Shown: piece after piece, positions 53,628-55,877 of the stretch
Numbering within the stretch: the stretch's first letter is position 1
Layout of the letters: every line of letters starts with the position of its first letter
Origin: Octopus sinensis
Lineage: Eukaryota
Assembly (NCBI RefSeq): GCF_006345805.1
Contig: NC_042998.1
Coordinates: forward strand, 185,814,001-185,878,000
Reading direction: 5' to 3'
DNA: 64,000 nt
Notes under the pieces: generated by a model
What the model was told of the DNA's origin: nothing
Database searches by the model: none
Seen by the model: only the letters and a program-made list of their open reading frames with translations
Translations under genes and position numbers: made by a program

Positions 53628-55877
53628 AGGAAGAAGAGAAAACCAAAAGGGCTCATACCTCACCCCCCAAAACCCATACACCACATCCCAACTGTCACCA
53701 ACAAGCACCAATACCAACAACAAAATCAACACACTCAGTAATAGACCCCAATACCCTTCCCCTCCCGCCTTCTGATTCCTCCGACATGTCGTCAGATGAA
53801 GACGACATAGAGGATTGGCAAGTGGCCACAGGGAGAAGGAGAAAAAGGGTAAAAACAAAAAAGAATCGAGAAGCAGACAAAACAGGGAGGTTTACCACTC
53901 CCGAAACAAAAAACACCCGCAGAAAACAAAAGCATCAACACAAACATACAAACACCAAACGCCCCAACAATGTTGACAGCTATAAACACTAACAATCCAG
54001 ACCTAATGGAATACATTAGGTCAAACATAACAGAAAACGATACCAAAACAATCATCCACGCATAACACCACCACCACAACACATTAAAATCATACACAAA
54101 ACACAGAACACACACAGTCACTATTGCGGAAGCGGGCGACGCTGAGGGGCATCCCGCGAGAGCTGGGATGAGGGAGGAGCGTGTCTGCATACGCGGACGA
54201 CGTCACCGTGATAGTGTCGAGCCATACGCATATCGACCTGGTCGGCGAGACACTAAAAGAATACGAAGCGGTAACGGGAGAAAAAATTAACTGGGAAAAA
54301 GTCAGTGGGCTTGCGGATCGACACCTGGAGAAGCAAGCCCATGCCATAGAACAGCGTCTCCATCGTGGGACGCCGGACCGACGGATCGGTTAAATAGCTC
54401 GGAGTCTGGTTCGGTCCGGACCTCCAGTTAGAGAAGAACTGGGACGAGATAATGAGTAGGGTGACCACTCTCACCCAGCAATGGACCAAGAGGAAGCTAT
54501 CCATAAAAGGTCGGGCGGAGGTGGCGAACGCGTACATCACATCCGTTATCGATTACCATCTGACCGTCGTGCCTTGTCCCGACCCTAGCATCAGCAAACT
54601 GGAACGCATACTCTTCCGCTTTTTGTGGAAGGGAAGAGTTCCTATCGTTAGGCGATCCATTTGCTGTCTACACCCGCTAAATGGAGGGCTGGGCATGCCG
54701 TGGTTGATGATGCGCAGACATGCGCTGAGACTTCGCTTCATAGATGACGGTGAACAGGTGTGGTCGCCGTTTGTGCGGTGCGTTTTCCCGCAGCTTGTCT
54801 CTTTGGCCGAACTGCAGTCGTGGATCAAACAGAGACCGAGACTAGGCGAATGGCACCGCGAGTGTCGCCTTGCTCTCAAGCATTTCTGCCGTCCGGGACC
54901 AAACTTGTGCGACTTCAGTTCCACAAAGGCGTTTTATAGAGGATTAGTGCGTTTTATAGAGGGGAGGTGCGACGACGTTCTCGGGCAGAATCTGGACGTC
55001 GACGGGGAACATCTGACCCGCTTGTTCAGGTCAACTTTCGGGACCTATGAACAATCACCAGACATCCCTGGCCTGGCAGTGCTATCGAGAAGCATTGCCC
55101 GTTCGGGATAAGCTCTACAGGCACGGTTCAAAACACACCGGATCGACTTGTCCGAGATGCGGTCAGAGAGGCGAAACCGTTCTGCATGCACTCGTGCAGT
55201 GTCCAACCATTTCGGACCTGTGGGTTTATGTCGAACGGCTACTGTCACATGTGGTACGAATTCGGTTGTTGGCCGAGTCTGTCATGAAAATTGCTCCGCC
55301 ACCTTCCTTTAACCGGGGAGGCAAGGCAGTCTTCATCGTACTCGAAGCCATGGTGAAAGAATATGTGTGGTGGACTCGAGCGAAAGGTTTAGAGACAAAC
55401 ACTTTCCTCTCTGGCCAATCGCTCATCAACTTTTTCAAGTACCACTTGAAAAGGAAGTTGAGAATAGAGAGGCAAGTTATGTCTCGTGAAAGTTTCAATA
55501 AAAGGTGGGTGAATGTAGCAAAACGGTACGCGCGAATGACGAAACCACTTTGAGCATGATCCTGTAACCCCCCCCCCCCAAAAAAAAGCGACAGAGAGAG
55601 AGAGAGCACTTTGCTCTCTTGTGATTTTCCCTCCCTGCCTGAGGTTACCGTGGTCTTTTTCGTAGGCTTTTCTTTCCACGGATAAACCTAATCTGCTTTT
55701 AACTTTTGATATTCTCTGTGATACACAATCCCTTTTTATCGTTTTTTCCTTCTTTTTTTTTTTACACGATCCCTTTTGATCGTAAATTTATTTTCTCCTT
55801 ATTTTTTTTTCGAAAATAAAAGCTCTACATTGTATTTTGTCCCCTCTGTGTTCGGCCCTGTGTGGCTAATAAAGAAA
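53627..55877 (+). mobile_element. Tx1/L1-clade LINE relic (putative 5' leader and ORF1 start joined to the 3' third of ORF2 and 3' UTR)
   Basis: RT motif VSAYADDVTV (~54178-54208), KINWEK, LGVWFG, FLWKG...GGLGMP, and a C-terminal WQCYREALP...CPRCG...ETVLHALVQCP zinc finger; at least two frameshifts. The 3' UTR ends aataaagaaa. ORF1 identity of 53786-53992 is inferred from position only. Confidence 0.9.

What the first reader, a model, noticed from the sequence alone, without database searches (positions are those of the whole stretch)
55836..55877. A young SINE has swapped its tail for the 3' end of a Tx1-clade LINE present in the same window
Seen: the last 42 nt of the Tx1 relic (tttgtcccctctgtgttcggccctgtgtggctaataaagaaa) align without gaps to the tail of the young SINE-A copies (tttgtcccctctgtgtttagccccttgtgggcaataaagaaa). 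Identity is 36/42 to the tail consensus and 35/42 to the copy at 48309-48350. Both keep a small stem-loop (gcc...ggc versus gccc...gggc) just before aataaagaaa. Older SINE-A copies (17530, 41650, 63617) have the same head and body but a different tail. Known: SINEs borrow the 3' end of the LINE whose reverse transcriptase mobilises them (e.g. eel UnaSINE1/UnaL2); usual partners are L2, CR1, RTE and L1, and Tx1 partners are rare. Inference: this family switched partner to a Tx1 lineage and was revived. TSDs of 9-18 bp fit an APE-type LINE. I cannot check whether this pairing is already recorded.
Basis: partly seen in the sequence, partly recalled or inferred. Interest (0 to 1): 0.85.

Follow-up and report, generated by a model that had tools for sequence, protein, structure and literature searches.

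The report
Octopus SINE shares its LINE's tail
The last 42 bases of a decayed L1/Tx1-type LINE in this octopus window are that LINE group's own conserved 3' hairpin signal. The window's commonest SINE carries the same signal at its 3' end, so this is an ordinary but well-supported SINE/LINE partnership rather than a recent partner swap.

Summary
Window 55836-55877 aligns without gaps to the SINE tails at 35/42 and 36/42 identity, and both elements end at the same base.

The 42-mer is not a stray SINE scrap. Related LINE copies from Octopus sinensis, Argonauta hians and a metagenome contig end in the same module. These copies share only 41-68% protein identity with the window relic. Their last 42 nt are 60-88% identical, while the rest of the 3'UTR is at shuffle level. 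The module contains a 4-bp stem with a CTTGT loop that shows compensatory changes.

The LINE belongs to the L1 superfamily. It has APE, RT and a CCHC zinc finger, its ORF1 has a CCHC knuckle, and its closest solved structure is human L1 ORF2p. Tx1 placement is likely from the literature but was not tested by phylogeny.

The "tail swap and revival" story is only partly right:
- Older SINE copies (about 17% diverged) do carry another tail, and copies with the LINE tail are younger (about 5%).
- The older tail is a variant of the same hairpin module, and a similar motif sits in the 3'UTRs of a sister LINE lineage.
- Argonauta SINEs already carry the "young" tail.
- Hybrid dimers carry both tails.

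This is a new member of a known kind and of moderate interest.

The parts
55836..55877 (+). 3'-terminal module of the LINE relic (the 42-mer), shared with the SINE tails
   Evidence: The same module ends related LINEs L002, L003, L004 and L006.
55854..55867 (+). Hairpin GGCC-CTGTGT-GGCT inside the module. Relatives have GGCC-CTTGT-GGCY.
   Evidence: It is part of the predicted minimum-energy fold. Covariation across LINE and SINE tails is shown.
54115..55553 (+). Decayed ORF2 remnant. It runs from just before the RT YADD motif through the CCHC zinc finger to the stop codon, with several frameshifts and stops.
   Evidence: tblastn to Argonauta ORF2 residues 720-1186 gives 57-61% identity. Pfam finds zf-RVT and a weak RVT_1 match.
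55554..55835 (+). LINE 3'UTR upstream of the conserved module. It is not conserved between copies.
   Evidence: the upstream 150 nt are 49-57% identical between copies, which equals the shuffle level.
53629..54114 (+). Sequence between the upstream microsatellite and the RT remnant. It may be ORF1 C-terminal or inter-ORF sequence of an internally deleted copy, but the similarity is weak.
   Evidence: One search gives E = 0.48 to the Argonauta ORF1 C-terminus in low-complexity sequence. Read by eye.
53323..53627 (.). (TCTA)n microsatellite abutting the 5' side of the LINE relic
   Evidence: These are the only two TCTA arrays in the window.
55924..56068 (.). (TCTA)n microsatellite about 46 nt past the LINE 3' end, with degenerate TCTA/TCTG units in between
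48124..48751 (+). It is flanked by a perfect 14-bp TSD, GGTACTCAACCATG.
30524..31299 (-). Y-tailed SINE tetramer with a 184-bp period. It is flanked as a whole by a perfect 18-bp TSD, AACAAACTATTATCGTAA.
9399..9814 (+). Y-tailed SINE dimer
3761..3989 (-). Y-tailed SINE monomer
35233..35460 (-). Y-tailed SINE monomer
32212..32421 (-). Y-tailed SINE, 5'-truncated, ending AAAGAAATAGGTAT
23065..23190 (-). Y-tailed SINE, 5'-truncated, with a 20-bp TSD (1 mismatch)
61719..61852 (-). Y-tailed SINE, 5'-truncated, with a TSD of about 10 bp
6375..6769 (-). Hybrid dimer: a Y-tailed unit, then TAG, then body positions 87-203, then an O tail. A 16-bp repeat (2 mismatches) sits at both ends.
56978..57385 (+). 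Hybrid dimer (Y unit followed by a unit with an O tail), inserted in the (ATC)n tail of an older O-type copy
17085..17418 (-). Hybrid dimer with deletions in both tails
17530..17751 (-). O-tailed (older) SINE monomer
41400..41613 (-). O-tailed SINE monomer, head-to-head with the next copy
41638..41870 (+). O-tailed SINE monomer
63614..63840 (+). O-tailed SINE monomer
58335..58564 (-). O-tailed SINE monomer, the most diverged, followed by (ATC)n

Best explanation
Window 55836-55877 is the authentic 3'-terminal recognition module of an octopod L1-superfamily LINE that is probably of the Tx1 clade. The module is a short hairpin (4-bp G/C stem, CUUGU-type loop, A/U lower stem) followed by AAUAAAGAAA.

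The dominant SINE family of the window carries the same module at its own 3' end. It has a head with pol III box-like motifs, a conserved body, and often forms 184-bp tandem multimers.

Shown:
- The module is shared and co-terminal in the LINE and the SINE.
- It is conserved at the ends of deeply diverged LINE copies.
- Its stem covaries.
- SINE copies and whole SINE arrays are flanked by 10-20 bp target-site duplications.

Inferred:
- The LINE's ORF2 protein recognises the hairpin on SINE RNA in trans.
- It then starts target-primed reverse transcription just after GAAA, as in 'stringent' SINE/LINE pairs.

The older O tail is a second variant of the same module, probably matched to a sister LINE lineage. 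The family's history is therefore one of tracking LINE sublineages inside one LINE group. The pairing predates the Octopus/Argonauta split.
For: (1) Co-terminal alignment at 35-36/42 identity with blastn E about 1e-6.

(2) The same end occurs on LINE relatives:
- L004, O. sinensis, 41% protein identity: ...ttgtccccctctatgtttgggcccttgtggctaataaagaaa
- L006, Argonauta: ...cgtcccctctatgtttttgcccttgtggctaataaaagaaa
- L002 and L003b.

(3) The last 42 nt are 60-88% identical between LINE copies. The preceding 150 nt are 49-57% identical, which is the shuffle level.

(4) Hairpin: 91.7% of cells pair against 64.6% in shuffles (0/500). Three of four pairs change on both sides, and slid controls pair 20-50%. 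The hairpin is in the minimum-energy fold of all tail types.

(5) TSDs of 10-20 bp, with a perfect 18-mer around a 4-unit array and a perfect 14-mer around a 3-unit array.

(6) LINE identity:
- Pfam finds Exo_endo_phos, RVT_1 and zf-RVT, and ORF1 has one CCHC knuckle.
- The best PDB match is human L1 ORF2p at E = 3e-51, against R2 at 1e-26.
- Octopus and mollusc surveys list L1-Tx1/Tx1 and no plain L1 among the LINE classes they name (PMC13282606, PMC8967140, PMC10294476).
- CCHC-type ORF1 in animals is described as consistent with the Tx1 clade (PMC5203782).

(7) Argonauta SINEs with a homologous body carry the Y-type tail. They end GAAATCTAT, like the Argonauta LINE L003b.

(8) An O-like motif lies in the 3'UTRs of sister-lineage LINEs L009 (31/37 identity) and L008.
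Against: - No intact LINE of this group lies in the window. The relic is dead and is not the best match to the SINE tail.
- No sampled LINE has the SINE's exact stem (GCCC/GGGC), so the true partner subfamily was not seen.
- The hairpin is small. Fold z-scores are weak (-1.8 to +0.1). The covariation rests on about three related groups of sequences, so it reflects few independent events.
- Tx1 placement was not tested by RT phylogeny, because no reference sequences could be obtained.
- Rfam and ARAGORN find no tRNA in the SINE head.
- The L008 and L009 loci with the O-like motif are probably not from an octopus, since no octopus SINE was found in those loci or in L007, about 21 kb together.
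- Trans-mobilisation itself is untested.
Confidence: 0.8

Rival explanations
1. One reading: a SINE that used a different LINE partner recently replaced its tail with that of a Tx1 LINE and was thereby revived.
For: Two tail types share one head and body. O-tailed monomers are 16.7% diverged from their consensus and Y-tailed units 5.3%. Diagnostic body differences separate the two groups.
Against: The O tail has the same loop, stem geometry and A-rich GAAA end, and a matching motif sits in sister LINE 3'UTRs. Argonauta SINEs already carry the Y tail, so it is old. Y-O hybrid dimers exist at three loci, one of them with a 16-bp repeat (2 mismatches) at both ends. This suggests the O tail was still in use after Y units existed.
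Confidence: 0.15
2. The 42-mer is a 5'-truncated SINE fragment that happens to abut the LINE relic. It is not part of the LINE.
For: 5'-truncated SINE copies do occur in the window (23065, 61719). The relic's 3'UTR upstream of the 42-mer resembles nothing else.
Against: At least five other LINE 3' ends from three sources finish in the same module at the expected distance from the stop codon. The relic's stem is of the LINE type (GGCC/GGCT), not the SINE type (GCCC/GGGC).
Confidence: 0.03
3. The transfer ran the other way: the LINE lineage captured its 3' end from a SINE.
For: Similarity alone gives no direction of transfer.
Against: The module is present on LINE lineages as far apart as 41% protein identity and in two octopod superfamilies. 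A related motif is present in a sister LINE lineage. SINE heads differ between Octopus and Argonauta while the tail is shared.
Confidence: 0.02

Closest known systems
Stringent-type SINE/LINE pairs with a shared 3' stem-loop, e.g. eel UnaSINE1/UnaL2 and zebrafish ZfL2 (PMC3747384, PMC4176376)
   Same: The SINE and LINE share a co-terminal 3' segment of about 40-60 nt with a conserved hairpin. Copies end in short repeats rather than poly(A). TSDs are present.
   Different: The partner here is an L1-superfamily LINE, not one of the L2 clade. No retrotransposition assay exists for this pair.
L1-clade stringent pairs: maize and sorghum ZmSINE2/ZmSINE3 with LINE1-1_ZM, and Chlamydomonas SINEX-3_CR with L1-1_CR (PMC3472496, PMC3747384)
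   Same: An L1-group LINE with a conserved 3' hairpin showing compensatory changes, shared with a tRNA-type SINE.
   Different: Those are plant and algal L1 lineages. This one is an animal (mollusc) lineage, probably Tx1. The 58-pair survey lists no Tx1 partner and no mollusc pair.
Crocodilian SINEU mobilised by Tx1-Mar (Kojima 2015, PMC4494074)
   Same: A SINE inferred to depend on a Tx1-clade LINE.
   Different: That link rests on a shared insertion target (Mariner-N4_AMi) and shared snRNA-derived 5' heads, not on a shared 3' tail. Here the link is the 3' module, and the SINE copies show no common target.
Microsatellite-targeting Tx1 elements: Kibi (TC)n, Koshi (TTC)n, and the crocodilian Tx1 families that target (TTCC)n/(TTTC)n (PMC4494074)
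   Same: The window relic sits inside the only (TCTA)n tract of the window. Related copies are followed by (ATT)n.
   Different: This is one copy only. The Argonauta and O. sinensis copies are not in microsatellites, and the SINE copies insert at varied sites. The repeat could equally be an expanded 3' tail of the LINE.

Membership tests
SINE/LINE pair with common 3' tail (stringent type) | The SINE 3' end is homologous to and co-terminal with the LINE 3' end | tested here: met
   35/42 and 36/42 gapless identity, both ending at GAAA. 37/43 to the O. sinensis LINE L004.
SINE/LINE pair with common 3' tail (stringent type) | The shared segment belongs to the LINE, meaning it is present and conserved at the end of other LINE copies | tested here: met
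   Seen on L002, L003 (twice), L004 and L006. The last 42 nt are 60-88% identical, against shuffle level upstream.
SINE/LINE pair with common 3' tail (stringent type) | A conserved RNA stem-loop lies in the shared tail | tested here: met
   A 4-bp stem with a CTTGT loop. 91.7% of cells pair, and 3 of 4 pairs have double changes. The stem is in the minimum-energy folds. Caveat: few independent lineages and weak fold z-scores.
SINE/LINE pair with common 3' tail (stringent type) | Insertions are flanked by target-site duplications | tested here: met
   10-20 bp, with two perfect examples of 18 and 14 bp.
SINE/LINE pair with common 3' tail (stringent type) | The LINE protein mobilises the SINE in trans through the tail | not testable with these tools
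   This needs a retrotransposition assay.
SINE/LINE pair with common 3' tail (stringent type) | An intact LINE partner was active at the same time as the SINE | not tested
   Only one decayed relic lies in the window. O. vulgaris is reported to have 13 recently active L1-Tx1 families (PMC13282606), but they were not linked to this tail.
L1 superfamily (L1/Tx1 group) of non-LTR retrotransposons | ORF2 with an N-terminal APE endonuclease, RT and a C-terminal CCHC zinc motif, with the RT closest to L1 | tested here: met
   The Argonauta relative L003 has Exo_endo_phos, RVT_1 and zf-RVT. The window relic keeps zf-RVT and the RT C-terminus. The best PDB match is human L1 ORF2p at E = 3e-51, with R2 at 1e-26.
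Tx1 clade | The RT groups with Tx1 references rather than with L1 proper in a phylogeny | not testable with these tools
   No Tx1 reference sequence could be obtained, and database names were uninformative. Indirect support: octopus and mollusc surveys list L1-Tx1/Tx1 and no plain L1 among the LINE classes they name (PMC13282606, PMC8967140, PMC10294476).
Tx1 clade | ORF1 of the zinc-knuckle type (Type I-like), not Transposase_22 | tested here: met
   L003 ORF1 (476 aa) has one CX2CX4HX4C knuckle. The Pfam zf-CCHC match at E = 0.0037 is below the curated cutoff, and there is no Transposase_22 hit. This is consistent with Tx1 according to PMC5203782.
Tx1 clade | Target-specific insertion | tested here: inconclusive
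   The window copy sits inside (TCTA)n, and L002 and L006 are followed by (ATT)n. L003 and L004 are not in repeats, and SINE targets vary.
tRNA-derived SINE | The head is derived from a tRNA and carries pol III A and B boxes | tested here: inconclusive
   A-box-like TGGCAGAATCG and B-box-like GAGTTCAAATTCC were seen by eye. ARAGORN and Rfam find no tRNA, even at E up to 10.

The most novel reading that the evidence does not exclude
Across octopods, one L1/Tx1-group LINE lineage uses a small, deeply conserved CUUGU-loop hairpin as a stringent 3' recognition signal, and this lineage drives the very large octopus SINE expansion. SINE families keep pace with competing LINE sublineages by exchanging variants of this one module (Y and O tails, Y-O hybrids). 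This would be the first Tx1-clade SINE/LINE pair defined by a shared 3' tail, and it is not in the published pair lists that I could search.
Probability: 0.35. Interest if true: 0.55.

Novelty: new member of a known kind. Interest (0 to 1): 0.4.

Why it matters
SINEs make up about a tenth of octopus genomes. Their expansion is a signature of the lineage, yet recent annotations leave most of them unclassified and name no LINE partner (PMC13282606).

Tying a major SINE family to an L1/Tx1-group LINE through a defined 42-nt hairpin module would do three things:
- It would name the engine of that expansion.
- It would add an animal example of stringent 3'-end recognition within the L1 superfamily. 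The L1-clade pairs listed in the 2013 survey are from maize/sorghum and a green alga.
- It would give a compact RNA element with natural compensatory variants for binding and retrotransposition tests.

It remains an instance of a well-known principle. It may also already be recorded in Repbase or Dfam, which I could not consult.

Tried and rejected
(1) Naming the LINE clade from database names.
- A second homologue search with the Argonauta ORF2 was swamped by the candidate cap and returned 9 hits with no useful names.
- An exhaustive representative search gave 150 relatives.
- Cluster look-ups gave only 'hypothetical protein', 'reverse transcriptase domain-containing protein' (Patella caerulea) and 'exonuclease III'.

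(2) Getting Tx1 or SINE reference sequences from paper supplements. None was held.

(3) Harvesting more LINE 3' ends from metagenome contigs. The protein-pattern scan gave 76 pattern matches with none confirmed. The DNA-pattern scan gave 0 matches.

(4) P0006 could not be located on a contig. The L001, L005 and L007 contigs end before, or decay at, the LINE terminus.

(5) A tRNA origin for the SINE head. Rfam (gathering and E up to 10) and ARAGORN found nothing.

(6) The second LINE fragment at 57957-58181 (-) is too short and too decayed to show a tail.

(7) ORF1 homology of 53629-54114 is only E = 0.48 in low-complexity sequence. The 'internally deleted copy' reading therefore stays tentative.

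(8) Chance similarity was rejected on the shuffles and E-values.
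Full report
**1. What is at the coordinates**

Window 55836-55877 reads tttgtcccctctgtgttcggccctgtgtggctaataaagaaa. It lies 324 nt downstream of the stop codon (55553) of a decayed reverse-transcriptase reading frame. 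It is followed by degenerate and then pure (TCTA)n repeats.

A blastn of 53700-55900 against the whole window finds, apart from itself and two weak short matches in its repeat end, only the 42-mer. The 42-mer matches 13 SINE tails at 81-85% identity with E = 4e-7 to 7e-5. The SINE tail consensus hits 10 sites at 3 or fewer mismatches, against 0 in shuffles. Both elements end at the same base.

**2. The LINE**

The relic keeps ORF2 from just before the YADD motif to the stop (54115-55553), with frameshifts and stops. Pfam sees zf-RVT and a weak RVT_1 match.

Its closest protein relatives are all octopod or octopod-contaminated:
- JGI and ENA contigs at 63-68% identity.
- Argonauta hians at 54-57%.
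- Octopus sinensis at 41%.

An almost intact Argonauta copy (L003) has three parts:
- An ORF1 of 476 aa with a single CCHC knuckle and no Transposase_22 domain.
- An APE endonuclease.
- RT plus zf-RVT.

Its best solved relative is human L1 ORF2p (E = 3e-51), far ahead of R2 (1e-26). The element therefore belongs to the L1 superfamily.

I could not run a Tx1-versus-L1 phylogeny because no reference sequences were obtainable. Indirect support for Tx1 comes from four sources:
- O. vulgaris active LINEs are listed as RTE, Dong-R4, CR1, L1-Tx1, Hero and R2 (PMC13282606).
- Cephalopod and mollusc surveys list L1-Tx1/Tx1 among the LINE clades they name and mention no plain L1 (PMC8967140, PMC10294476).
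- CCHC-type ORF1 in animals is described as consistent with the Tx1 clade (PMC5203782).
- The relic sits inside the only (TCTA)n tract of the window.

**3. Is the 42-mer the LINE's own end?**

Yes. The following LINE 3'UTRs end in the module:
- L004 (O. sinensis): ...attgtccccctctatgtttgggcccttgtggctaataaagaaa
- L006 (Argonauta): ...atcgtcccctctatgtttttgcccttgtggctaataaaagaaa, then (ATT)n
- L002 (JGI contig): ...gggcccttgtggccaataaaagaaa, then (ATT)n
- L003 (Argonauta): two 3' ends, ...cggcccttgtggctaataaagaaa and ...cagccaggtggctaagaaagaaa

Between these copies the last 42 nt are 60-88% identical. The 150 nt before them are 49-57% identical, no better than shuffled sequence. A terminal segment is thus held constant while the rest of the UTR and much of the protein (down to 41% identity) has drifted.

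The relic's stem is of the LINE type (GGCC/GGCT), not the SINE type (GCCC/GGGC). That also argues against a stray SINE fragment.

**4. The hairpin**

All tails contain a 4-bp G/C stem closing a CTTGT loop. The relic has a 6-nt loop, CTGTGT.
- LINE: G-G-C-C / G-G-C-Y.
- Octopus Y-tail SINE: G-C-C-C / G-G-G-C, so pair 2 is flipped from G-C to C-G.
- O-tail SINE: T-G-G-C / G-C-C-A, so pair 3 is flipped and pair 1 changed.

On a 15-sequence alignment, 91.7% of cells pair against 64.6% in shuffles (0/500). Three of four pairs show changes on both sides, and sliding the partner drops pairing to 20-50%.

Minimum-energy folds add an A/U lower stem that uses the AAUAAAG stretch in Y and LINE tails and AAAUU/AAUUU in O tails.

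There are caveats. The hairpin is small and fold z-scores are weak. The sequences fall into about three related groups, so independent events are few.

**5. The SINE**

About 26 units lie in the window. A unit has a head with A- and B-box-like motifs, a conserved body and a tail. Rfam and ARAGORN do not recognise a tRNA in the head.

Two tails exist:
- The Y tail: ...AATCGACTTAATCCGTTTGTCTGTCCTTGTTTGTCCCCTCTGTGTTTAGCCCCTTGTGGGYARTAAAGAAATA.
- The O tail: ...AATCGACTAGTCCCCTCCCCCAAAATTGCTGGCCTTGTGCCAAAATTTGAAA, followed by ATYATT or (ATC)n.

Divergence from each group's own consensus is as follows:

| Group | Divergence | n |
|---|---|---|
| Y units | 5.3% | 17 |
| O monomers | 16.7% | 5 |
| O-tailed second units and fragments | 13.7% | 4 |

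The claims 'younger' and 'older' therefore hold at the scale of this window.

TSDs are 10-20 bp. They include a perfect 18-mer around a four-unit array and a perfect 14-mer around a three-unit array.

**6. Why 'tail swap onto Tx1 and revival' is only partly right**

(a) The O tail is a variant of the same module. It has the same loop, the same stem geometry with compensatory changes, an A/U lower stem, a GAAA end and a trinucleotide repeat tail like the (ATT)n on L002 and L006. MAFFT aligns the two hairpins on its own.

(b) A motif matching the O tail lies in the distal 3'UTR, roughly 600-650 nt after the stop, in two LINEs of a sister lineage. It is CCCCTCCCCC...GGCCTTGTGCCAAA, at 31/37 identity in L009, and it is also present in L008. 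These LINEs are P0009 and P0011, at 32-42% protein identity to the window group. The loci are probably not from an octopus, because they contain none of the octopus SINE. They show only that the O-type motif belongs to this LINE superfamily.

(c) Argonauta hians has SINEs with a different head but a homologous body and a Y-type tail. That tail has the LINE-type stem and ends GAAATCTAT, exactly like the Argonauta LINE L003b. The pairing and the Y tail therefore predate the Octopus/Argonauta split.

(d) Three loci hold the same hybrid: Y unit, TAG, body 87-203, O tail. They are 6375-6769, 56978-57385 and 17085-17418. One has a 16-bp repeat (2 mismatches) at both ends. The two tails coexisted in single elements, and the O end seems to have been used after Y units existed.

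The most economical reading is that the SINE tracks sublineages of one LINE group.

**7. Mechanism**

Shown: the shared co-terminal module, its conservation, the stem covariation and the TSDs.

Inferred:
- ORF2p binds the hairpin on SINE RNA and primes reverse transcription just downstream of GAAA.
- The AATAAA sits so close to the end that LINE transcripts must run into flanking DNA, so the signal has to be read internally.
- This fits Y copies that end AAAGAAATAGGT(AT), carrying the first bases of a following unit, and the absence of poly(A) tails.

**8. Comparison and novelty**

This is the classic SINE/LINE common-tail relationship (PMC3747384).
- That survey of 58 pairs has no Tx1 partner and no mollusc pair.
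- Its L1-clade examples are from maize/sorghum and Chlamydomonas (PMC3472496).
- SINEU was tied to Tx1-Mar through shared targets and 5' heads, not through a 3' tail (PMC4494074).
- I found no paper describing an octopus SINE/LINE tail pair.

I could not consult Repbase or Dfam. I rate the finding as a new member of a known kind, of moderate interest.

Noticed in passing
window 35444-36105: A 19-bp minisatellite of about 34 copies, with unit AGGCGGCGAGCTGGCAGAA on the SINE strand. The unit is the first 19 nt of the SINE head, and the array directly abuts the 5' end of the Y-tailed SINE at 35233-35460. This may be a head-derived tandem array made by repeated template switching at the 5' junction or by later expansion.
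   Followed up: partly
window 30524-31299, 48124-48751, 9399-9814: SINE units form head-to-tail arrays with a 184-bp period. The junction is always the same (AAAGAAA-TAG-GTATTTCG), and the following units start at body position 87. Whole arrays are flanked by single TSDs, so multimers either moved as units or expanded in place.
   Followed up: partly
window 53323-53627 and 55924-56068: The only two (TCTA)n arrays in the window flank the LINE relic. Either the LINE inserted into a microsatellite, as microsatellite-targeting Tx1 elements do, or the repeat is an expanded LINE 3' tail. Argonauta LINE and SINE copies end GAAATCTAT.
   Followed up: partly
window 3678-3758 and 3965-4045: An 81-nt direct repeat at 90% identity. 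It consists of 56 nt of flank plus the first 25 nt of a SINE head, on either side of the Y-tailed SINE at 3761-3989. The downstream repeat leads into a different, more decayed SINE. This could be an unusually long TSD, a tandem duplication or a conversion event.
   Followed up: partly
window 6780-6950: The sequence GATATTARGYTGTAGAGA occurs three times, bracketing a 5'-truncated O-type SINE and the adjacent Y-O hybrid dimer. This suggests two successive insertions at the same nick site.
   Followed up: no
window 41400-41870: Two old O-tailed SINEs lie head-to-head in inverted orientation, 24 bp apart.
   Followed up: no
window 57957-58181 (-): A second, short and decayed fragment of an L1/Tx1-type ORF2 zinc-finger region (35-42% identity to the Argonauta and O. 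sinensis proteins). Its tail could not be recovered.
   Followed up: partly
window 50394-52050: Several ORF translations share the peptide ...RKxPKAPRGSGRGW... on both strands. This points to another repeat family, unrelated to the SINE studied here.
   Followed up: no
L009:5807-5817: A second exact GGCCTTGTGCCAAA motif lies about 400 nt downstream of the first in the group-B LINE locus. That genome probably also has a non-autonomous element or second LINE end with the O-like hairpin.
   Followed up: no
L004 (O. sinensis, 12.8 kb): No copy of the window's SINE body was found in 12.8 kb around the O. sinensis LINE, although the window holds about 26 units in 64 kb. This may be chance, or the family may be rarer in that species.
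   Followed up: no
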